A stretch of 64,000 nt of DNA, taken from NCBI RefSeq assembly GCF_000143415.4, contig NW_003314317.1, positions 496,001 to 560,000 of the forward strand. Direction: 5' to 3'. The notes beneath the pieces were generated by a model. The model saw only the letters and a program-made list of their open reading frames with translations, was not told the DNA's origin and made no database searches. Position numbers and translations under genes: made by a program. Positions 10,365-62,929 of this stretch are shown here, in pieces. How positions within the stretch are numbered: position 1 is the first letter of the stretch; every line of letters starts with the position of its first letter. The DNA is from Selaginella moellendorffii (taxonomy: Eukaryota > Plantae > Lycopodiophyta).

Positions 10365-10767
10365 ACTTCACCACCCATAGAAGAAGTTCGATGCCCACAT
10401 CGAACGTCTCGTTTTATCCTACGACTTGTTGACCATGTCTCCGGGGGCATCCCCCCACTTAGCGGTGCGCCTAAGTTAGCCTCCCTGGCCAAGAGTCCAT
10501 GACAACGGAATATAGGTGTCCCTATACTCCTCACCTCACCACGCCCTAGTATGGGGTCGGGACTTGAACCCAGCCTTGCTTTACTAGGGGGTTGGGACTC
10601 GAACCCAACCTCCGTAGAATACGTCCACGGATTCGACATCCCCGCAGGGAGTCGGGCGTAGCTCCCTACGCCTGGTCGACCTAGCTAACCCATGCTAATT
10701 AGCTTACCTTCGGCGCGCCTTCGGGTCCCAACATATGCCACTTGCTCAACTTTGCAAATTGATATTT

Positions 10768-31308: not shown

Positions 31309-33607
31309 ATGGCGAGTGATGAGAGTAAGAATGGATCGAAGCTAGATCCATCGCTAATCACTTTCTCTCGCTTCGGCATTTGTGATTTTCTTGGCAGATC
31401 TCCATGGAGCGCAAGGCATCAGCGAGCTCTGCCAGCGCCTAGGCCCCGGGTGGACGTGCCAGGGCAGCGAGACCTCCACTGGCTTCTTCGTGGAGCTCCT
31501 CAAGTCCAACGCCACGCCAGTAGTCCCGCGATCCACTCCAAGGCACTGCCCCAGCCTCCTCCTCGCCCAGGAGGAGCAAAGGTGGAGATTTGGCACTCGA
31601 GCCTTTGCCTATTGCCTGGGACTGGCCTATTGCTTCCTGGGACTGGCAGTGATCACTCGCGTCTACATGAGAGCTCTGGATTCCATCGTTCGCCACAGCA
31701 GGAAATCGGTCCACAGGGATCCCATCACTGGGCTTAGAATTTTCAGCGAGAGGAGGATCTGGAATCCCACCGTCGCGGACATCACGCTCCTCGCGCTGGG
31801 AACTTGTGCTCCACAGGTCTCGCTCGCGGTGATTGATGCCTGCCAACACATTGGACAAACTTCTGGCAGTTATACTCCTTTTTCTTTCTTCTTTTTTCTC
31901 TTTTGTTGTTCTTGGATTTGTATTCTTCTCTTTTGTCATCTTTGCATTGATGGAGCTTCGTTTTCCTCGGATGTTTGCAGAGCTTGGAGCTGGAACGCTG
32001 CTCGGATCGACGGCATTTAACTTGTTCTTGATACTCGCGGTTTGCGTCGTGGCTCCCAAACGCTTCCAGACCAAGTCGATAAGGAACGTTGGAGTTTATA
32101 TCATCGAAGTTGTTTGGTCTTTCTGGGCTTACGTCTGGCTCTTTTTGATCTTGGAGGTAAACTTTCTCATCATCCTTTCGAGTTTTCTTCCTTGATTTTT
32201 CTTGTTGACGATTCTTTAGATCTGGACTCCCAACGAGATCACTCTCTGGGAAGCAGTCTTGACAGTGGCACAGTTTCCACTTCTGGTTCTTCACGCTTAC
32301 GTCCAAGACAGGAACTGGAAATATTTGTCAATACCACTGAGAGAGTCGGACGCTATCGAAAGCTCGGACATGAACAACTTACATGAGCTCGCCAACGTTT
32401 CTCGGAGCTCCAAGTTCGCGGCCATGAGGTGAGTCTCGGACGCATCCCTTGTTGTAAGGCTATGGCAAATCACTTCTTGTTGTAAGTAGGACCTGGAGAG
32501 GCATTATGATGAGTCTTATGGCAGATATATCGAAGGCTCCGAGTCGTCAGCTGCGAAGGCAGCGGTCTTGCATTTCACTGATGGCAGCGCGGATGTTTTC
32601 GGTAAGAGAGTTGGTTGCCACTCGGCCTCATAATTTTCGTTTGTTCTTTTCGAGCCGAGCAGAAGACGTTGATACGAGCAGCAGAGACAACTTCGCGTTT
32701 CTGAGAGAGGGAGCCGAAACCGAGCATTTCTCTTGGAAAGCTCTGGGTACCGCGTGGAAGAACCAGTTTTACGATGCCATGACCGTAAGCTTCTTCGGTT
32801 CCCTCGACTTTTTTGCTGAACTTTGTTTTCGATGTCAGGTAGCTAGCATCGAAGAGGGTCGTGGTCAAAGGAAGCGCACTCCCTCGACGCTCCAGTTGCT
32901 ACTCCATCCCATTGTCTCTTACTGGAAAGTCAGCTTTGCTTTCATTCCCCCCGTTCAACTTCTTCACGGATGGCTCGCGTTTCTGGGCTCCATTTGCTTC
33001 ATTACATGGATCTCCTACGTCGTTGTCGAGCTCTCAAATCGCATCAACTGCGTGACAGGTATGAGACCATTATTTTCGCGATTTTGGCAAGAGAAAAAAA
33101 ATACAAAAACAAAAAAAATGCGTTTTTTACCACAGGAATCAGCTCCTACGTACTGGCTTTGACGGTGTTGGCGGCAGGAACGTCCCTTCCAAACCTTATG
33201 GCGAGTAAGATCGCTGCGGAGGAATACGACACTGCGGATTCAGCCATAGCAAACATCAATGCGAGGTAACAGATTCTTGACTTCATGTTTACCTGCTTGA
33301 TGAAAGTTCTCTTCACAGCAATTGTATCAATGTTTACGTGGGATTTGGCGTCCCGTGGTGCGTCTCAGCACTCTATAGCACGGGCTTCCATCAGAATCTG
33401 GTGGTTCCCGTAGAGGGATTGAAATTTTTGCTCTCGGTCTATTTCTCCACGGCAATAATGTGCTTCGTTGCTCTTACAGCGAGGCGACGTCTTCTGGGAG
33501 GAGAACTAGGTGGACCCCGGAAATGGGCTTGGGCTTCTGCCATCTTCTTTTTCCTTCTCTGGATCACATTCTTGACGCTTGCTTGTTTGGCAGGCAGATT
33601 TACGTGA
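31309..33607 (+). CDS. MHX: Mg2+/H+ exchanger (CaCA/NCX-like superfamily), multi-exon
   Basis: alpha1 [22 protein letters not shown]...[19 protein letters not shown], alpha2 [17 protein letters not shown]...[13 protein letters not shown]. Short GT-AG introns. Confidence 0.9.
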
Positions 33608-33849
33608 TCTGTTGTAAAAATAAGCCATCAATTACACATAGAATCAATTCTTTTGCCATCGGAGGAATGCAAAAACTACAACCTTTAGCTTTAGTGATTT
33701 TTCTCTCCGACGACAAACCAAGGATCTGGAAAAGATTATGTTGTAGAGCCAGAACGAAGCAAGACCTGTCAAAGGAGAACAAAACGAATCTCAAAGGTTC
33801 AAATGCTGGGTAACAGTATACCTTCTGGCAGATAGGACGCTGCTTGGTG

Positions 33850-35330
33850 TTCGTCTTGAAGCTGCCACTACAAATCAATCAAACATAAGAAAATAATTAC
33901 CAATAGTTCCTGTCTCCAGGATCAAGGAAGGGTGCTATTGTGTTACTATTTAAACGAGTTCCAAGGAAGCATAGTCACATGGCCGTTGTTTCATTTCCAA
34001 GACGATCGAAAACGGATCTCTGGACAGATGGAAATATTTAGCAAAAAAAGTTTTAAGCAACATTTCAGCACTGTCGTTTACCGAGGAAGAGATCTTGTTT
34101 GATCAGAGTGAATGAACTCGTGCCGTATTGCGAATCGCACCCAGCATCCAAATCAGAACGCAATGCCTCTAAGGACATATTGGACCTGTGTGCTTCGACA
34201 TCGACAAGTGCCAAAGATATGGATCGTATTATCAAAGTGAGAATTCTTCTCGTCGCTGCCTCTCTCTCGGCTTAGACACTTGGAAGAAAACGCGGACGTC
34301 AGCAAAAAGAGGAAGCATCCAAAGAACTTAACACTCACCTGGCATGAGAGCAGTTTGAGAGCAAAACATAGCGTCATATCGTCGAGCAATCTCAGCGGCA
34401 CTAGATCGGGCCCCCATAAAGATAGCCAACGCTTTCCGCAGCCTACTTGCATTCCTCCCAGTTCTAACTGGCAAAAGCTGTACTAGCCCTTGTCTGTTTC
34501 AGCCTGTCACTTTTACACGGTAAGACGACGGAAACAAGCGTGCATATCATACCGCTAGCTGTTGGAAATGACGTTGAACCGTGTGAAACCACTTCAAAAA
34601 AATTCCGCCCTCCGACTGGCATCTTGCCGAGTGTCTCGTTGTCTCTGAGCCGAAGGATACACAGTTGTACGCTCCTGTTCCTGAGCTCTGACGTAAAACC
34701 AACTTTGAGAGCCCGGATCAGCTGTGGAGGGCCCGATTCCTCCGGCCATATCCAGCTTTGATTCACGCAGACAAAACGAGTAGAAGTCCTTCACCGCGAG
34801 TCTTTGCTATACTTCATGTGAGTAGAATTCCGTGACGAAGTCCCGGGGATTTGAGATGAATTGCCTGAAAATTCAATGTGAGTCCATTGAGTCGAAAGAT
34901 AAAAAAATCTTTCTTTCTTTACCGTTTGATAGAGTCATTCCTCAATTACAATGAGCGCTATAAAGGGAATGCTCTCCATAAGAGCCACCATACCGAAGAT
35001 CTCGTGGACAGAAATCCGCGGAAATGAATAGCAGGCACTAAATCTGCGCATTGATTGACTCTCGGGGAATGCCTACTCGCACAAGCGGCAGGAAATATTT
35101 CCCTGGAAAGACGCACTGGATACCTCGATAATCTCTGCAAGATCGCCAGTGCCGCGAACGATCGTGAATGTAGCTCGCGATCGAAAAAGAACCGATCGAA
35201 GCCGGCAAGAATCCATACCTCGTCCCTCCGCCGCGCTCATTCCCTGTGCGCCAAAACCCCTAAATCCTCCCAAACAAGAAAGAAGCCAACGATGTGACTC
35301 GAGCCGTGGACGTCTCATCCAATGGAACAA
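33850..35330 (-). pseudogene. Unassigned spliced-looking gene remnant
   Basis: Donor/acceptor-like pairs and GC-rich exon-like blocks with stops in all frames. No domain recognised. Confidence 0.3.
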
Positions 35331-35657
35331 AGGAAAAAATAAAACAACTATACAAAAGCAAGAAGAAGAAACGGAGTGTTCTCTTTCTTCCTCTATAGGC
35401 TAACCTTCTTCCTCTTCCTCGTTTTCTCAAGCTTGAAACTCAATGTACTACTACCTCCTCGCCTTGCTTTCCTTCCTCCTCTCCCTCCTCGCAGCCTTGC
35501 TCGTTGTGACTTTCTTAAGTACCACTCGCGCGATCGCCTTCCTCGTAGTCCTTTTTCTCATCGTGTTCTTCACGTCCTGTTCGTTCTCTCCCGGCTGTGT
35601 CCATTGCTGCCGGGTCTTTACCTTCGCCTTCTCTTTGTTCGTCACTCTCTCCTTCCT

Positions 35658-38476
35658 TTAATCCCTGCTGCTGCTCACTTTGCTACTGCTGCCGCCACCG
35701 CCGTGCTTGGAAGATCTCGGCTTCCCTTCAAACGAAGACCTCCGCGACGACGAGGATGACTTGATCGAGACGGTTGTCCGAGGCCCCACAACCGACGACC
35801 CCACGCCAGCCGGCTCGCTCGGAACAAAGCAGCGTGACCGAGAAACTGTCGCCAAGCCACTGCCACTTTCTCTTCTCAGCGATGAAGACGACGTCTTGCC
35901 TGCCGCCGCCGCCGCCGCCGCCGAGCTCGTCAACCCGTTCACTTTGCTCGAGTGCCCGTCCTTTGTCTTGATCGATGGCGGCGCCGCCGCTCGAGCCGTG
36001 GAGCCGTGCCGTCCGGTGCTCTCCCTGTGCTCGTCCAAGTTTTTGTGGTTGCTCGTCCGAGCTGACGCTGATGCCGTTTCCTGCGTCGAGCCACCACCAC
36101 CCGGGGGCCGCTTCGCCGCCGCCGCTGCTGACGAGAGGGAATGGTTCACTTGGCTTAAGCTTCTCTTCTTCTCGCTGCTCACGGGGCTCTTCTTCACTGG
36201 CGGGTGGTGGTGGTGGCTGGCGGTCTCTTTCCGGGAAGTGCCGTGGCCGTCGGGGATCTGCGTGCTCGGCTTCTCGTCTATCCTCGCCAGCTTTGACGTC
36301 CTGTGGTGTGGAGCCTCGCTGCTTTGCTGCCTCTTGCCTTTGACGACGAACTCCTTGTCGTCCGAGTTGGCCATCGTGCAGAGAATAGTTGCAGCTTGAA
36401 CGCCCGGAGAGCATGGCATGGCTGCATGCATTAAACACCAGCAATGCGTTACTCACGACGTCCTAAAGAATAAGAACAAAAAGAGGTACCTGGTAGATTC
36501 GAGAGTGTTCTTCGACTGTGAGGTGCGTCATCGTCGTCACGTTTAAGTTGGAGCGAAGGAAGCTCTGGATGCACAGCCGACTTGCTCTTCTCAAACTCGC
36601 CTCCTCGATCCCTCTGAGGAAGTGAACCTTCTTCGTCTTGTTCTTCCTTGGGCCTGACCGCTGCAGCTCCGCTTCTCAACTCCGGCACCTCGACTTTCAC
36701 CGGCGTCGGCTCCACCTTTGTCTTTGAGCCACTCTCACTTTTCGGCCATGTCCGTTCGCCTGTCCTGCCGTTCCTTGCTGCTCTACTGTAATCCGACACG
36801 CCGCATGGAGAGAACGAGAAGGGAGATGGAGGAATGCCTTCGTATCTAGAGTTTTTCTCTGTACCCGGCCCCGCATGGTCCGTCGGCTTCGAGAACGATA
36901 TCAACGCGTCTAAAGAATCACTAGCCGGCAGCTTGAGTCTGTCCGCAAAATCTTCAACTGAGTGAAGAGGCAAGTCTTCGAGAGTGAAGGTTGGAAAGAG
37001 CTCGAACGATTTCGATTTCGTCTGCATGAAGACATGAATAAAAGATCAGCAAACCAAATGATAGAGAACGTACCTTGTCCAGGGATCCCGGCGTGTGTAG
37101 TCTGTCCTCGGATTGCTGGCTCTCGTCGCCTTGAGATGGCCTCTCGAGATCCAACATCAGCCTTACCTTCACATCTTCATTCAGAGCATTTTCTACAAAA
37201 GGCTTCTGAACAAACGTATGCTTTGGCAAAAGCTGCATGACATTGTTTATTTCCTTTAATACAAGTCCGGATTCGCCATCGCCGCCGTCATCGTCCGCCG
37301 ATGCTGGTTGCGTTTTCTCGCTGTCATCGGACAAAAGAATGTCCAGTGGAGTAATATTTACCATGAAGCGAGAGAGATCAACATGCTTGGACTTGAGCCC
37401 GTACATGTCTGCGAAAAAGGAAGAGGAAAAGAATCGTGTTTCAGATCGACGAAGGAACCAACTTGGACGAATTGTAAAGAAACTCACCAAGAATGCCAGT
37501 GGCACTAGCAGAGTTTGATGAGACTTTAAGCTTTGAAGGGGATAAATCGGCCACGGGAGGTAAGTGACCATTTTTTTTGTCTAGTCTTTTTGAGCTTTGC
37601 CCACGCCGTCTCCGTCTGGTTGACTCGACATTTTCTGAGAAAAGAGAGAGAGAGAGAAAAAAAGAGATGTTTAAATCTACTCAAAACTCCAAGAAAGAAA
37701 GAGAATGAAAAAAGGTAAGAGATGAATGATAAACAAACGCACCAGAGGCACTCGTGGACTGATCAGCAGCTCCATTGTTGGAGCCGTCTTTTTTGTCATC
37801 CTGGTGATTAGAGAGCTCCGCGGCAAGCACCTCCCCTTCTCTAGATCTCTTGCGGCTTCGACCCCCTCGGCCTCCCCCCACACCTTTGGACTCCGACCCA
37901 AGTCGCTCCACAGTTGTGATGCACGACTTGGTCTTTAGAACTCCCGTCCCAGAGCTATTTACAGGGGGGCCAGGCGCGTTCTTCAAAGTGATGACGCTCC
38001 TCCTGGGTTGCGGCTCCGAATTGGAGGACTTGGAGCCTGTGAGTACGCGACACAAAACAAGGAGATTAGAAATAGCAAGAACACGGAGGGAAAGGAAAAG
38101 GAGAAAAAAAAAAAAGAGAAGAACCTTGGAGCCTACCTGACTGCGAAAGAGACGAAATCCCCGAAATTGTCTTCCCGTTGAGATGAGGGGGTAGCATGGG
38201 GCTGCGAAACCCGTTGGAAGTGGAAACTCCCCCGGCTTTGGGATTGAAATGGGAACTTCTTGTCATCTTGGCTAGCGTTTCGTTGGTCATCATCTTCTCC
38301 AGCATCCCTTTGGACGACTCTGCGTATTCCATCCACCGCTTTTCCTCACCAATAGGAGCCAAATCTCGCTCGCTCGCCCGGCCTAGAGCCTAAGCCGCGA
38401 GCTCCTGCATGCCGCGAGGCTCTCGATTTACCCCGCCGCGAAGATTGAGAGCACAATCAATCTCCATCTCGAGCAT
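35658..38476 (-). CDS. Uncharacterised multi-exon plant protein, Ser/Lys-rich C-terminus, possibly At1g64050-like; start uncertain
   Basis: Exon ORFs 38066-38362, 37681-38055, 36954-37571, 36449-37027 and 35658-36431 joined by short GT-AG introns. Motifs DMYGLKSK and AATILCTMA recalled from a conserved plant family (unverified). Confidence 0.65.
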
Positions 38477-51646: not shown

Positions 51647-54157
51647 ATGTCGAGCAGCCTGTCGCTTCTTTGTTCCAAGCAAGGCCCACTCCACGCGTTG
51701 AGGGCTTTTGCGAGCGCTCATGTTCTTCACGTCGATAGGGCTCACAGCGAGGCGGATCTGGCACGCCAGTGCAACGATGCCAGAGATCTCTCCCATGCCC
51801 GCCAAATCCACGCTCGAATTCTCGCCACCGAGTGGCGCGGCAGCGTTTTCCTGGGAAATCAGGTTATTCATATGTATGGGCGATGCGGTAGCGTCGGCGA
51901 CGCCGATCGTGTGTTTCACGCGATGGAGCGGCGGAATCTCTTCTCATGGAACATCGTCCTCGCGGCATATGCCCAGAACGGGCATCTTGCCGAGTGTAAT
52001 GCCGGGTTCTCGAGGATTCCGGAATGGAATGTTGTGTCGTGGACGGTGATGATGGTGGCTTACACACAAAGAGGGAATGTCCAGGGCGCGAAGGAAACGT
52101 TCGATCAAATGCCGGAGCGGAATGTCGTGTCTTGGACGACCATGATCTCGCTATATGCCCAGTCAGGGCATTTCGAAGATGCCAAGAGAATGTTCTCTTT
52201 AATTCCGGAATGCACTGTGGTATCCTGGACGGTCATTTTCCAAGCCCACGTTACCAACGGCCAGATCGACAGCGCCAAAGCCGTGTTTGACGAAATGCCC
52301 GAGAGGAACGTGGTCGCGTGGACGGCCATGGTCTCGGCATATTCCAACCTCCACAGGCCGGAAGATTCGCTCGCGTGGCTCAGCAGGATGCCACAGTGGA
52401 ACGTGGTCACGTGCAACGTCATGCTGGACGGCTACGTGGCACGGGGCCTCTTTGACGACGCCGCCGCGCAGTTCCACGTCGTCCCCAAGGATGTGGTGAC
52501 GTGGAACACCATGCTGACGGCATGCACGGAGCACGGCCACGTCGACCTCGCGGTTGAAATGTTCCACAGGATGCCGCAGCACACCGTCGTGACGTGGAAC
52601 GCGATGATAGCCGGGTATGCCCGTAACGGGCATCTGGACGAGTCAAGGGCGCTGTTTGACTGCCTAGACGAACGCAACGCGGTGACGTGGACAACCATGA
52701 TTTCGGCGTACGCGCAGTGTAGATTACTGCGGGAAGCCGCGGTTCTGTTTCACGAGATGCCGCAGTTAGACGCACGGCCGTGGCACGTCATGGTTGCGGC
52801 ATATGCCGAGGCAGGGCAGTTTGACGACGCCAAGGCGCTGTTTGAGCAGTCCGACGCTCGGGATTCCACCACGTGGACGGCCATGATGGGCGCTTATGCT
52901 CACCACGGCCAGTGGGAACAATCCAAGGCCTTGTTCGATGGAATGCCGAGAAGAGCTGTGGAGCCATGGAACAATTTGATCTCGGTGTATGGCCAATGCG
53001 GCTATCTGCAAGACGCGATCGAGGCATTCCATAAGATTCCCCACCGGGACGTGATCTCCTGGAACTCGATCCTCACGGCCACCGCGCAAAATGGACGCCT
53101 GGACGATGCCGAGGAGCTCTTTCGCCAAATCCCCGAGACGAATCCAGTTTCTTACAACATCCTCCTCCAGGCGCACGCTCAATCCGGCAACATCGATCGA
53201 GCGCTCGCTTTGTTTCGATCGATGCCAGGGCTCGGGATCCTGGCGTGGACGGCGATGGTCCTGCTCTACGCCAAGACCGGCAATCTGAACGACGCGCGGG
53301 AATTTTTCCACAGAATGCCGCAGCGCGACGCCTTCTCGTGCATCACCATGATCGCGGTGAGCGCGATGAAGGGGAATCTTTCTGAATCAAACCAGTGCTT
53401 TCGCGAGATCCGCTACCACAACCTCGCGTCCTGGACGACGATGCTAGTGGCAAATGCCCAGAACGGGCATCTGGAGGTAGCGCGAGCGTTGTTTGATCTC
53501 ATGCCCGTACGAGACAACGTATCATGGAACGCGATGATCACGGGCTACGCCTCGAAGGGCCGTACGGAAGAGGCCCGGCGGATATTCGAGTCCATGCCGG
53601 AGCGCAACGCGGCATCTTTCGGCGCCATGATCTCGGCATATGCCCAGAACGGGTATATTCCCCAGGCGCGCGAGGTCTTCGAGAGTGGCGGCTCCTCCCA
53701 GCACGACGCCTGGAACGCCCTGATCGCGGCACTGGCGCGCGATGGCCACGCCGCCGACGCGATCCATCTCTCGCGCGCGATGGCGCTCGAGGGCTACGCG
53801 CTGGATGGGGAGTCCTTCACGGCCATCCTCACGGCGTGCTGCCACTCGGGCAACATTGGGCGAGGGATCCGTGAGTTTGGATCGATCGTGGATCACGGGC
53901 TGAGCCCAATTGGATCTCACTACTGCCGGATGATCGATCTCCTGGGGCGTGCCGGGGAGCTGGGCAAGGCGGAGGATTTGATCGCGGCAATGCCATTCCC
54001 GCCCTGCGATGTGGCGTGGGGGACGCTCTTGGGTGCGTGTAAGGTCTCGCCAGATGTGGAGAGGGGGATGCGAGCGGCAGGGCAGGCATTGGAACTGGAT
54101 GGCCAGAGATCCGGCCCCTATATCATGCTCTCCAACTTGTACACGAGAGAGGCGTAG
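51647..54157 (+). CDS. PLS-class PPR protein with E domain and no DYW (organellar RNA-editing factor type)
   Basis: Single 836-aa ORF with more than 20 ~31-aa repeats (RNVVSWTTMISLYAQSG), HYCRMIDLLGRAG, AWGTLLGAC, YIMLSNLY. Confidence 0.95.
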   Translation: MSSSLSLLCSKQGPLHALRAFASAHVLHVDRAHSEADLARQCNDARDLSHARQIHARILATEWRGSVFLGNQVIHMYGRCGSVGDADRVFHAMERRNLFSWNIVLAAYAQNGHLAECNAGFSRIPEWNVVSWTVMMVAYTQRGNVQGAKETFDQMPERNVVSWTTMISLYAQSGHFEDAKRMFSLIPECTVVSWTVIFQAHVTNGQIDSAKAVFDEMPERNVVAWTAMVSAYSNLHRPEDSLAWLSRMPQWNVVTCNVMLDGYVARGLFDDAAAQFHVVPKDVVTWNTMLTACTEHGHVDLAVEMFHRMPQHTVVTWNAMIAGYARNGHLDESRALFDCLDERNAVTWTTMISAYAQCRLLREAAVLFHEMPQLDARPWHVMVAAYAEAGQFDDAKALFEQSDARDSTTWTAMMGAYAHHGQWEQSKALFDGMPRRAVEPWNNLISVYGQCGYLQDAIEAFHKIPHRDVISWNSILTATAQNGRLDDAEELFRQIPETNPVSYNILLQAHAQSGNIDRALALFRSMPGLGILAWTAMVLLYAKTGNLNDAREFFHRMPQRDAFSCITMIAVSAMKGNLSESNQCFREIRYHNLASWTTMLVANAQNGHLEVARALFDLMPVRDNVSWNAMITGYASKGRTEEARRIFESMPERNAASFGAMISAYAQNGYIPQAREVFESGGSSQHDAWNALIAALARDGHAADAIHLSRAMALEGYALDGESFTAILTACCHSGNIGRGIREFGSIVDHGLSPIGSHYCRMIDLLGRAGELGKAEDLIAAMPFPPCDVAWGTLLGACKVSPDVERGMRAAGQALELDGQRSGPYIMLSNLYTREA

Positions 54158-54346
54158 ATTGTCTGTAAGGATTGATCAAAAACAGCCTGGATTTTGTCAC
54201 AGGAACTGACACATTCGTTTCTAGAAGGATGGATTGATCTAACTTCCTTTTGAATTTAACTCGATTTTAATAATTTTTTACCTTTTTTCTTTTATCTTTC
54301 TAACCATTTTTATGATTTTAACCAAATAATAAAATCAAATTTATAT

Positions 54347-54367
54347 TGTGAGGTCCATGCACTCACA
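54347..54367 (+). mobile_element. 21-bp collapsed solo LTR of family A
   Basis: TGTGAGGTCCATGCACTCACA equals the LTR start fused to the LTR end through shared TCCA. Flanked by ATAT on both sides. Confidence 0.8.
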
Positions 54368-54417
54368 ATATGATATTATTTTTATTAGGAAATCCTAAAA
54401 AGGTTCTTAAGTAAGTA

Positions 54418-55403
54418 CCTTTTGCACTCAGTTCCATAATACGTACATGCATTGCAGCTTGACTCCCCTTCCATAAGCAAGAATAATCTCGCTAATCATA
54501 GTCAGTTGTGTCACTTTGGTTTAGTAGTTTTCCTTCTGGAGATACCTACAAAGTTCCAACCTTAAGAAAAGAAGACAATTAAAAACCTCATACACAGAAA
54601 GACCCTCATACCCTTTATATCGTGAGGCCCTCCTTTAGCAACCCAGCCTTGAACATCCTCTATTTCACTCTTCACCTGGGCGTCTCCTCACCACATGTTT
54701 CAATCGCATCAGCATGCTCCGAATAGTCCACTCTTCTCACATGGTTTAAGAATTAAAACAAGCAAATGGTGTCGAGGGTATTCCTTGGGCCTTGATTGGT
54801 GAGTCTTGGATGATGATGTTGGTTCGATCAAGTTCCACGACCACCACAACTGATGCGGTCTTGTTTTAGATCAGATCTCAGGAACAGGAAGAGGAACGTA
54901 CATCCTCCGGCTCGGAGACCCTCAACGTCTATAAACGTATGACATTCATGCTTCTTTCCGTTAGCGAACAAGTGCTAGTATAGCTTTAGATAGAATTGTC
55001 AGACTGTGGAAAACGTTGGCTATCTTTATGGGGGCCCGATCTAGTGCCGCTGAGATTGCTCAACGATTTAACGCTATGTTTTGCTCTCAAACTGGAAAGA
55101 CAAGCTCGCATGCAGGTGAGTGCTAAATTCTTTGGATGCTTCTTCTTTGCTGTTTTCTTCCAAGTGTAATGAAGCAAATGGAGCTCAGAAACGTGAGCCA
55201 TCCATGAAGAAGTTAGACAAGAAGAAGCCGAGATCTAGCATGGCGGCAGCAGTAGCAAGGGGAGCAAGAGTCACAAGCGAAGGTAAGCACACAGGAATAG
55301 GATGTGAAGATAACACAATTGGGCGAGTGGTACTTAAGAAAGTAACAACAAGCAAGGCTGCGAGGAGGGAGAGGAGGAAATGTCTAGATTTCTCCCCACT
55401 CAT
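54418..55403. pseudogene. Deleted, decayed direct duplicate of 56545-58527
   Basis: Colinear blocks, e.g. 54420-54720 vs 56545-56985 and 54822-54842 vs about 57208-57228. Same novel junction at about 55215 and about 58330. Confidence 0.85.
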
Positions 55404-55429
55404 GTGATGCTTTCTATTGGCTTACCTCA

Positions 55430-56365
55430 ACGCTCCCTCGTAATCCAAGTGTCACCCAACCTAAGCCTAGTGCAGAATGAACAAATTTGTAAGGTCCTAA
55501 TGGCTTGGTGAGGATGTTGGCCAATCTCTCTCCCATAGGAACATAATCGATGTACATTACTCGTGCTTTGACTTATTCTCACACGTAATGGAACTGCCCA
55601 AGAATGTGTTTGTTGTGACCATGGAAGACTGGATTCCACGTCATTAATATGCTGCTTTGATTGTCACACCTCTTTAATTTTTGGATCAAGCTTCTTGTGT
55701 AACTAATCTAGAACATGGGCATATGTGGTGCAATTAACATGCAAAGATGTGAAATATCAAACTTCTTTCCAGACCACACTTCCTCCAGAGTTTGGCCACC
55801 TTTTAGTGCAGTGGTGGCTAAACAATTTTGCACATGCATCACCATAGCAAATGCCTTTTGCCAGAATGCCTAGCCTAATTTAGCATAAAAAAGAAGGATG
55901 CATGCTGCATTGTGTTTGATTCTTCCTCTCAGTGATACCATTTTGTTGTGGGGTGTATTGTGCAGTGATTTAGTGTTCACATGACAAAAGTCTTGAAGAG
56001 AATGGTTAAAATACTCCTTTCCACCATTAATTCGCAATGCGCTAATTTTCTGCTCTAAGATTTGTTTCAATGAAAACTTTGTAGTGTTTGAAGGTCTCTT
56101 AGCCTCGTGCTTTCCTCGCAAGAAGAATATGCATGTTTTACGATTGAAATCATCAACTAGCATCATGAAATATTTCACACCAAAGTGATTGGGAACATTC
56201 ATAGGCCCACACAAATCTGAGTGAACAAGTTCTAGTGGATATTTGTTTTGACACATTGATGAAGCAAAATTTTGCTGATGAGGATGTTTCCCTAGCATAC
56301 ATGTCTCGCAGAAGGGGTGTGTAATCTTTATCCCAAGGTTCAGCCCCATAACAATGTTTCATGTC
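55430..56365 (-). mobile_element. Ty1/copia remnant (GAG-pre-integrase/integrase)
   Basis: CETCMLGK...PLELVHSDLCGPM...YFMMLVDDF...LRINGGKEY, frameshifted. No LTRs found. Confidence 0.85.
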
Positions 56366-56525
56366 TTTATATCGGGAAGGAAGTATTGCCCTCAGTAAAG
56401 CAATTGACTGGCAAAAGGGTATTTGAGAGAAAGGCTAGGCTGAAAAAATCAATTTCTATAATTTTATATTTATTGATATTATTATTATCGCTTAACCCTA
56501 ACCGTACCACGAATTCATAAAAACC

Positions 56526-57001
56526 TTATGCCATAACTCTATACCCTTTTGCACTCAATTCCATAAGCTCTGCAAAAATTGCATCTTGACTCTCCTGCCA
56601 TAAGCAAGAATAGTTTCGCCAATCATAGTCAGTTGTGCCACTAGTTTGGTCCACCGATTCCAATACTTTTCCTTCTGGAGATACCTACAAATTTCCAACC
56701 TCAAGAAAAGAAGATGAAAGAAAAACAGTTGAAAACCTACCTTCTGGACCAAATACCTCACATATACATGCTCCTCATCATCCCACAGAAAGAGAGCCAG
56801 AGCCCGCATACCTTTTTCATCAGGAGGGAAGTATTGCCCTCCTTTGACAACCCAGCCCTGAACATCTTCTATATCAATCTTCACAGGGAAGTAATCCCTC
56901 TCAGTCACAGGATCGACGATGGGCGTCTCCTCGACAGAGAAATCCACCACATACCCGGGATGTTTCAACCGCATCAGCATGCTCCGGATAGCTTCTTCCA
57001 T
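56526..57001 (-). CDS. Two-exon orphan protein, about 139 aa
   Basis: Exon 57001-56741, GT-AG intron 56740-56685, exon 56684-56526 (VSPEGKVLES...GYRVMA*). Frame is open after splicing. Confidence 0.6.
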
Positions 57002-57254
57002 CTTGACAAAACCTAAAGCCTACCCTAAAGCATTTGGGCGAAAGGCTATTGAAAAATACAAGCGCTCCAGAATCATGAGCACACCGTATTTTTGTTCCGT
57101 GCAATGGTGCGGGCATCGCGCTATGCGAGGGTATTCCCGGGTCCTTGAGAATTCCAGAATGAAATGGAGTCTTGGGGCTTATTTACAAAGAGAAGATGCT
57201 AGATAACGTTCGATCAAGTTCCACGACCATGCGGCAACTCGGTGACACGGACGG

Positions 57255-58861
57255 ATGGAGCATTCCCTGGTAAAGAAAGCCTTTTCTTCGACTCAATGGA
57301 CACAATAGATTTTCAAGCCAAGACTTCTTGTGTGAATCAAAGGTGGGGTGTAACAAGCTCTTTACAGCTGATGCCACCTCTCAAAAGTGGTTCTACATCA
57401 GATCTCAGGAACAGGAACGTCCAACTGTGTATCCTCTGGCATTCGACACTCAGGAATTGTTTTCAAGTGGTTGCACACGGTTCAACTTCATTACAAACAG
57501 CTAACAGTATAACATTCATGCTTCTTTCCGTGTCCTTACCGTGTAAAAGTGATAGGATGCTATGGAGTGCTGGTACAGCTTTTGCCAGATAGAACTGGGA
57601 GAAATGCAAGTAGGCTGTGGAAAACATTGGCCATCTTTATGGAGATTGCTCAACAATCCGTTTTCAATCGTATTTGAAATGAAACAACGACCATGTGAGT
57701 TTGTCCTCCTTGGAACTCATCTCAAAAATGTGATGCAATAGTACCCTTCGTTGATCCTGGAGAGAAATCTATTGGTAATCAAGTTATGATACTGTTTTGG
57801 ATTGTTATATTGATTTGCAGTGGCTGCTTTAGGACGAACATCAAGCAGCATCCGAAGGTATACTGTTTACGTAACATTTGAACCTTTGAGGTTCGTTTGT
57901 TTTGACAGGTCTTGTTTCGTTCTACTATTTTTTTCGAGCGCGATCCTTGGTTTGTCTCGTGGAGAGAAGAATCAGTAAAGGCTGTAGTTTTTGCGTTCCT
58001 CTATGACACAAGAATTGTATTTTTATGAATCATGTCAATCTGTCTGTGACGAAGGCAAGTGTCAAATAGACCGAGAGCAAAAATTTCATTCCTGCTAAAG
58101 GAACTACGTAAACGTTGATACAATTGCTGTGGAGAGAACTTTCATCAAGCAGGTAAACATGATGTCCAGGATTTGTATGTTTGCTATGGGTGAATCTGCA
58201 GTCTCGTCGCAGCGATCTTGATGATCTGATACTTGTCATGCAGTTGATGCAATTTGAGAGCTTGACAACGATGTACATGTAATGAAGCAAATGGAGCTCA
58301 GAAACGGGAGCCATCCGTGAAGAAGTTGGACAAGAAGAAGCCGAGATCTTCCAAGCTCAGCAGCTCGGCAGCAGCAAAGGAAGGAGAGAGTCACAAAGAA
58401 AGAGAAGGCAAGGAAGGAACAGGATAACAACGAGCAGGGAGAGGAGGAAGGAAAGCAAGGTGAGGAGGGGAGGAGGGGAGTTTCAAGCTTGAGAAAACAA
58501 GGAAGAGGAAGAAAGAGGCCACTCATGAGTTTGTTTCATTGGATGAGACGTCCACGGTTCGAATCACATGGTTGTCTTCTTTCTCTTTTAAAATCTTCAA
58601 AGAGAATTTAGGGGTTTTAGCGCAGGGAGCTCGGGCAAGGGAATGCATGAGCTATGTGATCTTCATCGGCTCGATTGGTCGCGCTTTAGATCATGAGCTA
58701 CATTCATGAGGTATGGATCTTTATTGGGCTCGATCGCTTGCATTTTAGACCACGAGCTACATTCACAATCGCTACGCTTGCGAATTTGCAGAGAATATTG
58801 AGGTGTCCAGTGTGCCATTCTTGCATTCCCCGGAATTCTTTCCGGGAGTGAGATCTTCGGT
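57255..58861 (-). repeat. Inverted, circularly permuted, deleted copy of 32956-35724 (includes MHX 3' exons)
   Basis: Matches run 34979 down to 32956, then jump to 35724 and run down to 34992. Confidence 0.85.
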
Positions 58862-58956
58862 TCTTATTTTCCTTTCTATCATATGACATAGCCACGTGGA
58901 CCGTGACTATGCCACGTGGATGTCATACGTGGCAGTGTTTAAATCTTTTTGGCGGG

Positions 58957-59946
58957 ATGGTGCAAGACGGCTGGGCGCTTGCTTGCTTCTGTGATGCGCC
59001 TGATGTCCCTATCGTGCTCAAGGTAATACTGTCAATGCTAGTGAAGGAAATCCCCTAACAGCAGATCTCTGGTGCTTTGTCATGCAGGGGCAGAGCCTGC
59101 CTTTCATGGGAAGTGAGGACTATCTGATTAATCCTCTCGTCAGGCCGAGGGAAGGAATCCCCGCTCAGTTCCAGGTGTTGTTGCTCCCCAGCTTCAAATT
59201 TCAATTGCAGGTTTGTTGCTTTAGCTTTATCACAGGACGAGGTTCTAAGTCTTTTTTGGTTCTTTGTTCCAGGAATTATACAACATCAGTGCTTGTGGAG
59301 ATAACGTTCCCTTGGATGGAGCTCAGTCCCTGCTGCTCCCCTGCTTCAAATGGCAATCTCAGGTTTGCTGCTTTATAGGTTCTAAGTCATTTTTATTTTT
59401 TCTTCCAGGAATTCTCCAACATCAATGCTCGTGGAGATGACATTCCCTTGGATGGCGCTCAGTTCCTGCTGCTCCTCAGCTTCAAATGGCAGTCACAGGT
59501 TTGTTGCTTTCCATAAGCTTAGGTTCAACACAGAACGAGGTTCTAAGTTTTTTTATTCTTTGTTCCAGAAATTTTACAACATCAGTGGTCGTATACTCGG
59601 AGGTAATGTTCCCTTAGATGGAACTCGAGCTGCTACAAGCATAGTTCAAGAGTCAGATGCTTTGCTCATCATTGGCTCGACTGTAATGGTTTTACCAGCC
59701 TTTCGTCTTGTGAGGTAAGTGGTAGTGTGACTTTTCTTTGACTTGCGTTTGAATCGTTTCCCTCTGTTGCCAGTGCCACTCATAAGGGTAAAACTCGAGC
59801 CGACGAGATTGCTTGCTTTGAGATCGGGAGCTGTGTTGGTGAAGTGAGTTTGTCAATGGAACTCTCAAGTCTTGTGAGCATACATCCAATTGGCTGCTGC
59901 CCCCACAAAGGCGAGTGCATAGATTCTGAAACTCGCTATAATGTAG
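58957..59946 (+). pseudogene. SRT2: Chimeric gene or pseudogene carrying the C-terminus of an SRT2/SIRT4-type sirtuin
   Basis: GGNVPLD...ESDALLIIGSTVMVLPAFRLV and GKTRADEIACFEIGSCVGE(IL). The N-terminal NAD-binding and catalytic half is absent. Confidence 0.7.
59162..59625 (+). repeat. Three tandem exon-plus-intron units (about 140-165 bp)
   Basis: Repeated gctcagt..ctgctcc..gcttcaaat...cag|gtttg...ttccag|gaatt..caacatca..ggagataacgttcccttggatgg. Confidence 0.85.
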
Positions 59947-59978
59947 GTCTTATAACGTGTGTTTTTTTTATCGTGCAG

Positions 59979-60854
59979 GATTCAAGCCCCTCCTTGAGGA
60001 GGTGGAGAGATGTGTTCTGGGGCACAAGATCATATCCATCTCTATTCCAAGCCAGCAAAGTCAGCTCATAGAGCATGGTGAGCATTCATTTTACTCCCCT
60101 CAGAAAGCAAGATTTTCTGGTTCTATTATTTGTTTCTTGTGTAGGAACTATTGGGCTAGCACTACTTTGCAAGCAAGGATTCTTGGTTCTCTTTGATTCC
60201 TTGACAACTGCAACTGAAGGTGATGGGAGTGTTGTTGAGATGAGAAGGAACGTGCAGAAGATTGTCGAAGTAAGAAGTGAGCCAAGACTTCGAGTTGGCT
60301 TTGCTGGGGAAGTAGCTGCGTGTTGTCAACTCATCAAGCTTTTACAAGTGAAGCTGAGCAAGAAGGAGTTGACACATCATAATGCCGTCAAGTTCATGAT
60401 GAAGAAAGCAAACCTATTCTCAAGCACAGATGGCAACTTCAGTGCATCTTTCTTTGTCTACGATGAGAACACACTGGTGATGATCAAGGATGAAGGCAAC
60501 GGATTTAAGACAACAGCGCTTACGAAGGAGCAATCAGTGTTGGTCATTGGTTCCGGAGCACGACAAGCACGAATGATTCTTGCACAGCCGGTTCGAGGAC
60601 AGAACCATGGGGAAGCAGCAAGTGTGGGAGAAGCTCTTTCTTTGGGTCTCGACGCCTTTGCTCAAGCTTGTGTTGAGAATCCGGAATGTGGAGGGGATTT
60701 GTGTGTCATTGACGGCAGCAGAAACATCGACTTTGGTGGAATGGAGTTCAAGAAGGCACTTGCAAGTGCAAAGTCTAACTTTTCCTTCCAGTATGCAAGG
60801 CGAGGAGTGCAAAGAAACGCACTGAACATTAAGATTGCATTGTTTGACAAACAG
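59979..60854 (+). CDS. Divergent 20S proteasome beta-subunit-like (beta5/PBE-like Ntn hydrolase) core; extra small exons probably extend to about 61.6 kb; true start unresolved
   Basis: Intron 60078-60144 joins LIEHG to TIGLAL. D17 (FDS), VQKI, FAGEVAAC, VIGSG, EALSL, ENPECGG follow the beta-subunit pattern. Confidence 0.72.
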
Positions 60855-62929
60855 GTAATCCTCTCATCTTTAGCTCTGTCTGCTCTAGTTTTTTACTCGT
60901 CTTCTAGGAGGAAGCTGCTTCGGCCAGGGATTCTTCTGCAGAAAAGGTCCAGAGCGTCAAAGAACAAGAAAAGGTTTTCAATCCTTTTGCTATGGTTTGC
61001 TTTAGCTCAAAACCAATGTACAGGAACACAACCGAGGTGGTGCCACTCATTGCTTCCAAGAGTTCAAGCAGCATCAGAGGTAAGCTTGTTCACTGTAGAT
61101 TTCAGAACTTCAACATTCTTACAGGAGCATCACCAGCAGCCAAAACATCGACTCACGTGAATTGAAATCTATCAAAACTGTGGATGTGCTAGTAATGGTG
61201 TGTTATCCTTTTCCTTTACTTTGTTGTAGCTCAGGATCAATGTATAGGTTCAAAACCGAGGAGTCTATACGCTCGCCACTCATCGCTTCCAAGTCAATTA
61301 CAAAACAAGGGAGTTCAGCAAGCACCAGAGGTAAGCTCGTTCATAGATTCAAGGAATTCTTACCACAATACATTCTTACAGGATCATCTGGTTCTCAAAA
61401 AAGTGTTGCATGATTGTCTGGTTCTAGTGAGGGTAAGTCTCAATCTCTAACTCCAGCAGCTACACTAACATCCTTTGTCATACTACAAGCAGTGAAAAGG
61501 CTACGTGTTGGAACTGTATCTTCGAAGCATTAAGGTCTATTGAAAGTAAAATGGATGGAAGGTATGATGGATTGGAAATGTCAGATCGCAGTTAGAAGAA
61601 GAGGAACATAACCGTTAGTTCACTGAGAAGAAGAAGATAAGTGTTAGTTAAGCTAGAAGAAGAGGAAGATAACCATTAGTTCCTCAGTTGCTTCTTTGTT
61701 TGTATTTTTTACTGTCGGGTAAAGCTTTTGAGATATTTGCTTGGCCAGAGGGTCAAAATTATGATCTCACAATTTTCTATGCCCAACTGCATGGGATGGA
61801 TGACCCACGCACTCGGCTGCGAGATGGAAGAAGGGTCATAGGGAAATGAATTCCTCTCTCGATTGCAGCTGTTCTTGAAACTAGATATTGTTGACAGGAA
61901 GCAATGGCAGCAGTTCTCTACGACTGGAGTGCCGCATCACCGTCGGATTTGAAGGTAACAATCCTTTGGTCACCATCCAAAGCTTGGAGCGTTGGCAAGT
62001 ATACTCGAGCGGCATGAGCATTGGGCATTCAGCAAATTGATGCTATCCTCGGATCTTTGAGATGTATCTCAAGTGTGGGAGAAGCACTGGAAGAAATGGT
62101 ACCAAGTGTGGTATGGCCAAGGTGGTGCAAAACCAACAAGTAGCTGGGAACAAGGTAGGAATCTTTCCCTCATGAACTAGGAACTTCGATAGAGAAAATG
62201 AAAGAGAACTTGCTGCGACAGCTTTTAGCGCTAGGCCACAGAGACAATGGTCTCTGGAGGAAGAGTTGACATGAATGTCCAGCATTCCAAATTTTATTGC
62301 AAAGTGTATTATTTTAAGAGAAACTTTTCTAACAAGCTTTCAGGATCTTGTCTCCCCCTCAGTGGAGTGTGGAGGACCCGACCTCATTTAAGTCTTTGAT
62401 CATTGGAAACTTCACCTGGAAATTTGAAAAAGGAAATAGAAAAAGGAAATAGAAAAAGGAACAAAATATGTTCTGGTTAATTTATGTAATAAAATTAATC
62501 TTGTGTTTATAAATTAGAAACTGTGAGGGCCAAGTGTACAGCTACGATGCTGTATATTAATATTAGCGTAGTGGGATTTTGGTAGCCGTCGGATTGGTTT
62601 CAATCTGGACCACTCGCTCCTGTATATAAGTTAGGGTTTTTGGGCTAATGGATATGCACATTTCTGTATTCCCTTTTTATATTCCATGCACTCACATTGG
62701 TGGAGGTGAGGGGCACCTTTGATTGTCCCTGGGGAGTGCTTGGATTTAGGATTTTGGTTTAGATTTAGCTTTTGTATTGTCTAGATCTAGCTTTTTCCAT
62801 TTCCTTTCTTTTGTTCTTTCCTTTCAGGATTTTGGTTTAGATTTAGCTTTTTGCATTGTCTAGATTTACCATTTCCTTCCAGCTTTTTGTCATTTCTCTT
62901 CTTTTGCTTTTTCTTTTTCGTTCATCTTC

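What the first reader, a model, noticed from the sequence alone, without database searches (positions are those of the whole stretch)
57255..58861. Circularly permuted inverted duplication, the signature of a reintegrated DNA circle
Seen: the copy begins at source position ~34979, runs down through the MHX 3' exons to 32956, crosses a novel junction at ~58330 (short filler) to ~35724, and runs down to 34992. It ends about 12 bp from where it started. Inference: a ~2.8-kb eccDNA of 32956-35724 formed, reopened near 34985 and inserted ~22 kb away, then eroded by deletions. The inverted homology to MHX could also generate antisense or siRNA.
Basis: partly seen in the sequence, partly recalled or inferred. 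Interest (0 to 1): 0.75.

Follow-up and report, generated by a model that had tools for sequence, protein, structure and literature searches.

The report
Rotated copy of a gene tail
A 2.8-kb piece of spikemoss DNA (the tail of an ion-exchanger gene plus the spacer behind it) was copied long ago with its two halves swapped, as if it had passed through a DNA ring, a route already known from cattle and human genomes. The swapped copy then spread locally to at least four related copies.

Summary
Window 57255-58861 is an inverted, diverged (about 82-88% identical), indel-ridden copy of source 32953-35724. It reads 34979->32953, a 5-nt filler (TTCTT), then 35724->34992. Only 12 source bases (34980-34991) are missing where the two ends meet.

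It is not a private event. The window is Selaginella moellendorffii GL377621.1:496001-560000. The same fusion junction and the same flanks recur in:
- a second, more deleted copy at about 54844-55379;
- the other haplotype;
- two further copies about 75 kb away.

The rotation therefore happened once, long ago, in the short promoter region between two divergently transcribed genes. Those genes are the small gene SELMODRAFT_422379 and a proteasome-like gene. The insert was then carried along by segmental duplications and eroded by copy-specific deletions.

A circular intermediate remains the most economical origin (about 0.55). Sequence alone cannot separate it from swapped capture of two adjacent fragments, or from a lost tandem duplication at the source. 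No transposon hallmarks were found, and introns are retained. The siRNA idea is untested; only three exonic exact matches of 21 nt or more exist.

The scan has noted two other rotated duplicates elsewhere in this genome. This is a new member of a known kind, of moderate interest.

The parts
32953..34979 (+). Source segment A. It starts in the middle of the third-from-last coding exon of the Na+/Ca2+-exchanger-family (MHX-like) gene. It then runs through two introns (33059-33135, 33268-33318), the last two exons, the stop codon at 33605-33607 and 1.37 kb of 3' flank.
   Evidence: Sequence read. Pfam Na_Ca_ex hits on exon ORFs, Atlas hit. Alignments.
34980..34991 (+). 12 bp of the source (AAGAGCCACCAT) not clearly represented in any copy. 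This is the inferred opening point.
34992..35724 (+). Source segment B: spacer between two convergent genes, plus the last 67 bp of the minus-strand ORF 35658-36431.
57255..58331 (-). Copy B, arm A' (source 34979 down to 32953). It includes decayed MHX-like exons and a retained intron 2.
58332..58336 (-). 5-nt filler (TTCTT in source orientation) at the fusion junction J. The filler TTCTT is the same in all five copies that keep J; the flanking bases of J differ at 1-3 positions between copies.
58337..58861 (-). Copy B, arm B' (source 35724 down to 34992). It contains a 59-bp tandem duplication at 58646-58765.
54844..55379 (-). Copy A, the more deleted paralogous copy. It holds A' pieces (source 34732-34244 and 33006-32953), the same junction J (A' ends at 55218, filler 55219-55223, B' starts at 55224), and B' running down to source 35473.
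56445..57254 (-). Flank X: the two-exon gene SELMODRAFT_422379 / LOC9654045 (ATG at 57001, stop at 56526) with 254 bp of upstream DNA abutting the A-end of the insert.
54331..54843 (-). X_A: a decayed tandem paralog of flank X that precedes copy A.
58862..59161 (+). Flank R: the 5' region of the proteasome-like gene G (ATG at 58957). It holds a CACGTG-rich imperfect palindrome at about 58880-58930, roughly 20 bp from the insert boundary.
55414..56349 (-). Copia-type integrase fragment lying between copy A and X_B. It is absent from the other haplotype.
   Evidence: Pfam rve hit. The L002 map.

Best explanation
A 2772-bp stretch of genomic DNA (32953-35724) was duplicated once, long ago, at the DNA level, through a one-unit circular form. 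The stretch comprises the 3' end of the MHX-like gene, the spacer behind it, and the last codons of the convergent neighbour.

Proposed sequence of events:
1. The two ends of the stretch were joined by end-joining with a 5-nt filler, forming junction J.
2. The ring was opened at 34980-34991, losing up to 12 bp.
3. It was ligated without homology into a break in the roughly 350-bp divergent promoter region between gene X (SELMODRAFT_422379) and the proteasome-like gene G.
4. Almost at once on the divergence scale, the unit G-R-[B J A]-X was segmentally duplicated several times. This gave copy A and copy B in the window and copies C and D about 75 kb away.
5. Each copy then lost different internal pieces.

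Shown: the permutation, the three novel junctions, their sharing among copies, retention of introns, and absence of transposon ends. Inferred: the physical circle, the order of ligations, and the break at the target.
For: - One-unit permutation with ends 12 bp apart in the source. For two independent end points in a 2772-bp unit, landing this close has a chance of about 1%.
- A single fusion junction lies inside one exon of each donor gene, so the source arrangement is ancestral.
- J is the same junction, with the same 5-nt filler, in five copies (W_A, W_B, hap2_B, C in both haplotypes). The A-end|X boundary is shared by W_B and C, and an 8-bp remnant survives in X''. The R|B-start boundary is shared by W_B, hap2_B and D.
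- No copy extends beyond 32953-35724, and their union covers 2312 of 2775 positions by BLAST (range then taken as 32953-35727).
- No second copy or tandem duplicate of the source lies next to the MHX-like gene in this haplotype.
- No target-site duplication, terminal inverted repeats or microhomology at the integration junctions.
- Intron 2 and the intron 1 donor are retained.
- The maximum-likelihood tree is nearly a star: S 0.08, A 0.2-0.3, D 0.29, (B,C) about 0.1, inner branch 0.02. The three-way count is S-unique 23, A-unique 32, B-unique 26.
- The same signature is read as a circular intermediate in human and cattle (PMC7188851; PMC7450558).
Against: - No circle has been observed, and the event is too old (K2P 0.19-0.37 to the source) for scars to be read finely.
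- A three-break 'cut in two and ligate in swapped order' event needs the same number of breaks and joins as the circle route. It gives this arrangement in 1 of 4 configurations.
- In the window the units form [B J A X][B J A X]. This could also be read as a tandem array of the source unit with X inserted at 34980-34991.
- No empty R|X site was found. The G and X families have no members outside these two clusters.
- Another rotated block in this genome was traced by the scan to a tandem-duplication junction (s1-398775).
Confidence: 0.55

Rival explanations
1. One-step swapped capture without a free circle. A copied or excised 2.77-kb fragment was broken once more at 34980-34991. The two adjacent pieces were then stitched into a chromosomal break in the order B-A, either by end joining or by replicative template switching of the MMBIR/FoSTeS type. 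The far ends were ligated to each other.
For: - It needs the same number of breaks and joins as the circle model.
- The ends coincide by construction.
- The paralogous cluster shows a scrambled patchwork of G and X pieces in alternating orientation (L005 10742-11422). This shows that multi-fragment stitching has happened in this region.
- The star-like tree suggests a burst of rearrangement.
Against: - Only 1 of 4 order/orientation classes gives the observed arrangement.
- Both pieces must be captured at one site with nothing lost or interposed.
- No microhomology is visible at the integration junctions to prime templated copying. After 20-30% divergence this is a weak argument.
Confidence: 0.2
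2. Origin from a head-to-tail tandem duplication that has since been lost. Two forms are possible. In the first, a slice spanning the duplication junction was copied elsewhere. In the second, the present [B J A X][B J A X] is a remnant of a tandem array of a dispersed source copy, into which gene X was inserted at 34980-34991.
For: - A tandem duplication of 32953-35724 would leave both donor genes intact and would create J.
- The window shows two units in tandem, with X exactly between A-end and B-start.
- The scan's follow-up s1-398775 found such a case in this genome.
Against: - No tandem duplicate of the source is present in this haplotype.
- A slice would need its two ends to fall within 12 bp of the same source position, a chance of about 1%.
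- The array reading needs the array to start and stop exactly at the X|B boundary.
- The array reading also needs R, the 5' end of gene G, to abut B-start by chance. Yet R|B-start is conserved in two clusters, and the DNA after copy B is not X-like.
- If the tandem duplicate resolved by recombination, it would itself release a one-unit circle.
Confidence: 0.12
3. Gene-fragment capture by a transposon (Pack-MULE, Helitron or CACTA), or retro-copying.
For: The interval between the PPR gene and gene G is a mosaic of gene pieces and a copia fragment.
Against: - No terminal inverted repeats or target-site duplication flank the insert or the X+insert unit.
- The insert ends (ACCGAAG... and ...CTCCAT) do not look like Helitron termini. 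This judgement rests on my own knowledge of the TC...CTRR consensus.
- Introns and intergenic DNA are retained and there is no poly(A) tract.
- Transposon capture does not predict a one-unit rotation.
Confidence: 0.03

Closest known systems
eccDNA-mediated duplications and circular segmental duplication pairs in the human genome (Takahashi & Innan 2020, PMC7188851; Chicote et al. 2020, PMC7450558)
   Same: - Block order flips from A-B to B-A with orientation kept.
- One fusion junction joins the distal ends of the donor.
- The opening point is a single position.
- The junctions carry only short indels or fillers and no homology.
- The donor is left intact.
   Different: - The unit here is 2.8 kb, against about 20-130 kb in the human cases.
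- It is much older (about 75-88% identity, against 95-97%).
- It is in a lycophyte.
- It lies on the same scaffold as its donor and within a locally duplicated cluster. That is the situation for which Takahashi & Innan add a caveat about nested duplications.
Serial translocation of the KIT region by circular intermediates in colour-sided cattle (Durkin et al. 2012, as cited in PMC7450558 and PMC12235870)
   Same: A germline-fixed, circularly permuted duplicate, with an end-joining scar at the fusion point and small losses at the opening point.
   Different: - The cattle event is recent, hundreds of kb long, interchromosomal and has a phenotype.
- The case here is an old fragment of a gene tail with no known phenotype.
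Slice copied across a tandem-duplication junction (the scan's follow-up s1-398775 in the same genome)
   Same: It also produces an apparent rotation and a novel head-to-tail junction.
   Different: Here no tandem duplication survives at the source in this haplotype, and the copy is exactly one unit long, with ends 12 bp apart.
Filler-DNA or templated patchwork insertions at double-strand-break repair sites in plants (my own knowledge: Gorbunova & Levy 1997; Salomon & Puchta 1998)
   Same: Ectopic genomic fragments are ligated without homology into a break, with short fillers. Scrambled patches are present nearby.
   Different: Fillers are usually tens to hundreds of bp and are not complete one-unit permutations.

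Membership tests
Duplication through a circular DNA intermediate (eccDNA reintegration) | Two blocks of the donor appear in swapped order with the same relative orientation (A-B becomes B-A). | tested here: met
   34979->32953 is followed by 35724->34992 on the + strand.
Duplication through a circular DNA intermediate (eccDNA reintegration) | A single novel fusion junction joins the two distal ends of the donor segment, without flanking DNA between them. | tested here: met
   35724 | TTCTT | 32953; the same junction is found in five copies.
Duplication through a circular DNA intermediate (eccDNA reintegration) | The outer ends of the copy map to one point of the donor, with no gap or overlap beyond a few bases. 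| tested here: met
   The ends are at 34979 and 34992, leaving 12 bp unrepresented. Both ends are significant against shuffles.
Duplication through a circular DNA intermediate (eccDNA reintegration) | The donor locus is intact and carries no tandem duplication with the same junction. | tested here: inconclusive
   Met for this haplotype.
Duplication through a circular DNA intermediate (eccDNA reintegration) | Fusion and integration junctions show end-joining scars, not extended homology. | tested here: met
   5-nt filler at J. No shared sequence at R|B-start or A-end|X, and no target-site duplication.
Duplication through a circular DNA intermediate (eccDNA reintegration) | An empty target site exists in a paralog or outgroup, or the circle is detected directly. 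| not testable with these tools
   The G and X families exist only in the two clusters, and all units carry the insert or its remnants. No eccDNA data or other Selaginella genomes are at hand.
Transposon-mediated gene-fragment capture (Pack-MULE / Helitron) | Terminal inverted repeats with a target-site duplication, or Helitron-type termini with a 3' hairpin, bounding the captured DNA. | tested here: not met
   No flanking inverted repeats or target-site duplication. The nearby palindrome lies in the conserved promoter region of gene G, outside the insert.
Processed retro-copy | Loss of introns, a poly(A) tail, and content limited to a transcript. | tested here: not met
   Intron 2 and the intron 1 donor are retained. 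The copy includes intergenic DNA and part of a convergent gene.
   - Two exon ORFs hit PF01699 at E=2e-4 and 4e-4, both below the gathering score for single exons.
- The Atlas look-alikes are Streptophyta Na_Ca_ex clusters with score 0.92.
- A word search with the last exon found nothing in the allowed length range.
- Exons were searched singly. The spliced protein was not assembled or searched, so MHX orthology is not verified.

The most novel reading that the evidence does not exclude
The rotation and the local amplification belong to one burst. A ring (or a replicative intermediate) carrying the MHX-like tail landed in the shared promoter of the head-to-head gene pair X/G. The chimeric unit was then amplified within a very short time into several copies, possibly while still extrachromosomal. 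Promoter-proximal ends of the insert were kept because they now serve as regulatory DNA for X and G.
Probability: 0.1. Interest if true: 0.6.

Novelty: new member of a known kind. Interest (0 to 1): 0.38.

Why it matters
If the circle reading is right, this is a small (2.8 kb), germline-fixed, ancient example of circle-type duplication in a lycophyte. All three junctions are still legible after about 20-30% divergence. It lies in a promoter shared by two lineage-specific genes.

It extends a mechanism documented in cattle, yeast and human to an early-diverging vascular plant. Together with two other rotated duplicates that the scan noted in this genome, it suggests the route may be recurrent in Selaginella.

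It also carries a methodological caution. The best-preserved copy is not necessarily the primary insertion, and the signature cannot by itself separate a free circle from swapped two-fragment ligation.

Tried and rejected
- **Third tandem unit.** The DNA to the right of copy B (58862-59170) was tested for being a third, X-like unit of a tandem array. It shows no similarity.
- **X from near the source.** X was tested for derivation from the source neighbourhood (30-38 kb). Only a low-complexity 22-mer matched.
- **Transposon hallmarks.** None were found.
- **Empty-site paralog.** The X and G protein families were searched for a unit lacking the insert. Only the two clusters exist within the length limits of the search.
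- **MHX identity.** Naming the donor gene from its last exon alone gave no hit. Pfam and the Atlas support only the family level. Exons were searched singly by reference, and the joined spliced model was deliberately not built.
- **Sirtuin resemblance.** A resemblance, recalled from memory, of ORF 59425-59718 to a sirtuin motif was not borne out by Pfam and is dropped.
- **Promoter/terminator scan.** The bacterial-type scan is irrelevant to a plant and is ignored.
- **Exaptation of insert ends.** Retention of the insert ends in all copies was looked at as a sign of exaptation. The pattern is weak.

Full report
**What the window is.** The small ORF beside the feature is 99% identical, over 60% of its length (exon 1), to SELMODRAFT_422379 of Selaginella moellendorffii. 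The locus fetched for that protein is 100% identical to the window, which places the window at GL377621.1:496001-560000. It is plant DNA; nothing here was taken for human.

**The observation.**
- BLAST of 54000-59500 against the window gives inverted matches to 32953-34725 and 35106-35659, with E-values down to 1e-61.
- Gapped alignment chains these matches into two arms.
- Shuffle-controlled local alignment extends the left arm to 57272-57318 <-> 34916-34863 (0 of 300 shuffles reach the score). After a 40-bp deletion, it continues to 57255-57268 <-> 34979-34964.
- The right arm extends to 58826-58861 <-> 35023-34992, again with 0 of 300 shuffles.
- On the + strand the copy therefore reads 34979->32953, then five bases, then 35724->34992.
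- In source orientation the fusion reads ...GATCTCGGCTTC | TTCTT | GT(C)CAACTTCTTCACGG.
- The unit is 2772 bp, and 12 bp (34980-34991) are unrepresented.
- The copy keeps 1607 bp, is 81.8% identical over 1513 aligned columns, and lacks 16 source segments of 17-362 bp.

**What the donor is.**
- On the + strand, exon ORFs at 31382-32020 and 33338-33607 hit Pfam Na_Ca_ex at E=2e-4 and 4e-4. The last exon's Atlas look-alikes are plant Na_Ca_ex clusters.
- Reading the sequence gives exon/intron borders at 33058|33059, 33135|33136, 33267|33268 and 33318|33319, and a stop codon at 33605-33607.
- The breakpoint at 32953 lies inside a coding exon (…IPPV|QLLHGW…).
- The breakpoint at 35724 lies inside the last 67 bp of the convergent minus-strand ORF 35658-36431.
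- Both genes continue beyond the breakpoints, so the source order is ancestral and the copy is derived.
- I searched the exons one at a time by reference and left out the joined, spliced protein. 'MHX' is therefore supported only at family level. A word search with the last exon alone found nothing in its length range.
- The copy retains the intron 1 donor and all of intron 2, including a 30-nt exact match. It is a DNA-level copy, not a retro-copy.

**It is not a single copy.**
- A second copy sits at about 54844-55379, with the same fusion (A' ends at 55218, filler 55219-55223, B' starts at 55224).
- Both copies are preceded by the same non-source DNA, X (54331-54843 ~ 56445-57229).
- X is a real two-exon gene on the minus strand (ATG 57001, stop 56526).
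- Cluster look-up and locus retrieval then gave the other haplotype (L002, GL377571.1) and a paralogous cluster about 75 kb further along the same scaffold, in both haplotypes (L003, L004/L005).
- In L002 the PPR gene is 97% identical to the window and gene G is 96% identical.
- Mapping the elements on these loci shows the recurring unit G – 136-bp repeat – R – [B J A] – X.
- The fusion J recurs, with the same 5-nt filler, in W_A, W_B, hap2_B and copy C of both haplotypes.
- The A-end|X-upstream boundary (…GCTCTCCAT|CCGTCCGTGTCACC…) is shared by W_B and copy C. Eight bases of it survive next to another X copy, X''.
- The R|B-start boundary (…AAAATAAGA|ACCGAAGATCTC…) is shared by W_B, hap2_B and copy D.
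- No copy reaches outside 32953-35724. Together they cover 2312 of 2775 positions by BLAST alone (range then taken as 32953-35727).
- Deletions differ between lineages and even between haplotypes. In the window, copy A lacks 33007-34245 but keeps J. In the other haplotype it keeps 33239-34835 but lacks J. Copy B of the other haplotype lacks about 33035-34756. This confirms erosion from a full-length ancestor.
- One deletion (33445-33571) is shared by the A and B lineages and is probably early.

**Timing.**
- K2P distances over the shared A region are: S–B 0.24, S–C 0.19, B–C 0.13, S–A 0.31-0.37, S–D 0.37.
- The maximum-likelihood tree is almost a four-way star, with an inner branch of 0.02.
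- The three-way site count is S-unique 23, A-unique 32, B-unique 26 of 335 columns.
- The insert was therefore duplicated with its flanks very soon after it arose. Copy C split from the copy B lineage later.
- The copy named in the finding is the best-preserved descendant. It is not demonstrably the primary insertion, and its nearest relative is copy C, not the source.
However, that relative is a paralog of the already rotated insert, with the same flanks. It is not a head-to-tail array of the donor.

**Where it landed.** tblastn of the G proteins puts G's ATG at 58957 on the + strand, 96 bp from the right end of the insert. X's ATG is at 57001 on the minus strand, 254 bp from the left end. 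The insert therefore split a roughly 350-bp region between two divergently transcribed, lineage-specific genes. A CACGTG-rich imperfect palindrome lies about 20 bp from the boundary and is conserved in both clusters. No target-site duplication, terminal inverted repeat or microhomology is visible at either integration junction.

**Mechanism.** The three defining features of a circular intermediate are met:
- block order is swapped with orientation kept;
- one fusion joins the distal donor ends;
- the outer ends meet at one donor point.

The junction scars are of end-joining type, as in the human and cattle cases (PMC7188851; PMC7450558). For two independent end points, falling within 12 bp of each other in a 2772-bp unit has a chance of about 1%. 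That counts against a random slice from a tandem dimer and against two unrelated templated patches.

Three caveats keep the circle at about 0.55.
1. Cutting the fragment once more and ligating the two adjacent pieces in swapped order needs the same number of breaks and joins. It differs only in the order of ligations, and one configuration class in four gives this arrangement. The scrambled G/X patchwork at L005 10742-11422 shows that multi-piece stitching does occur here.
2. The window's [B J A X][B J A X] can formally be read as a tandem array of the unit with X inserted at the opening point. I rate this low. The array would have to begin and end exactly at the X|B boundary. R, which is gene G's own 5' end, abuts B-start in two clusters. 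And the DNA after copy B is not X-like.
3. A tandem duplication at the donor could have existed and been lost. The scan traced another rotated block in this genome to exactly that (s1-398775). No such duplicate exists in this haplotype. If such a duplicate resolved by recombination it would itself release a one-unit ring carrying J.

Transposon capture and retro-copying are rejected on tested features.

**The siRNA suggestion.** Exact matches of 21 nt or more between copy B and the source number eight. Only three of these lie in MHX-like exons: 32956-32976, 32987-33008 and 33420-33444. Some annotated gene models include antisense pieces of the insert: the 827-aa model listed for L001, whose span converts to about window 57562 onward, and residues 241-342 of P0004, mapped. 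These look like prediction artefacts, because the G models from the other haplotype and from the paralogous cluster (P0008, P0010) start at about 58957, and P0004's gene has RefSeq isoforms of only 139-160 aa. No expression or small-RNA data are available, so the idea is untested.

**Comparison and novelty.** The signature and its interpretation are established for cattle KIT translocations and for human segmental duplications. In three literature searches I found no report of the same signature for a plant germline duplicate, but that is not a systematic search. I file this as a new member of a known kind. It is a small, old, well-documented case in a lycophyte that was afterwards multiplied by segmental duplication. 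The scan has noted two other rotated duplicates on other pieces of this genome: s1-398775, explained by a tandem junction, and s1-418393, read as circle-like.

Noticed in passing
L005:6900-16800 (GL377621.1, about 75 kb beyond the window's end) and L003 (other haplotype): A paralogous cluster of the head-to-head gene pair G'/X', carrying remnants of the same insert. It also holds a scrambled patchwork at 10742-11422 in which short G and X pieces alternate in orientation. A further G'' (91.5% identical to G) is fused directly to X'' at the old insert boundary.
   Followed up: partly
window 59162-59626: A tandem repeat of 136-152 bp (three to four units, 72-86% alike). It lies inside the 5' coding part of the proteasome-like gene G; residues about 22-189 of the hap2 protein P0008 map across it. 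This suggests a repeat-encoded N-terminal region.
   Followed up: partly
window 58880-58930: An imperfect palindrome with three CCACGTGG (G-box-like) motifs. It lies about 20 bp from the insert boundary and about 30 bp upstream of G's ATG, and is conserved in the paralogous cluster. It could be a promoter element or a fragile site; neither was tested.
   Followed up: no
window 55414-56349 (-): An isolated copia-type integrase fragment (Pfam rve, E=3e-5) with no LTRs nearby. It lies between copy A and gene X and is absent from the other haplotype, where X is followed after about 12 bp by copy A DNA.
   Followed up: partly
window 54000-60200 versus L002: The two haplotypes are unusually different here. 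They show 3-4% divergence in the PPR gene and gene G, about 7% in X, and different large deletions in both insert copies. The annotated PPR model is 836 aa in one haplotype and 744 aa in the other.
   Followed up: partly
window 57562-62391 (+); L004:10001-12259: Annotated gene models (an 827-aa model in this haplotype; SELMODRAFT_422383, 350 aa) include 'exons' that are antisense MHX-derived insert DNA. These are probably ab initio prediction artefacts.
   Followed up: partly
window 58646-58765: A 59-bp tandem duplication (2 units, 80% alike) arose inside arm B' of copy B. It is the only sizeable insertion relative to the source.
   Followed up: no
window 56526-57001 (-) and paralogs: X is a small gene family that appears specific to Selaginella, with proteins of 139-160 aa, two exons and no Pfam domain. 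Intact ORFs survive in paralogs that are 60-66% identical. Its function is unknown.
   Followed up: partly
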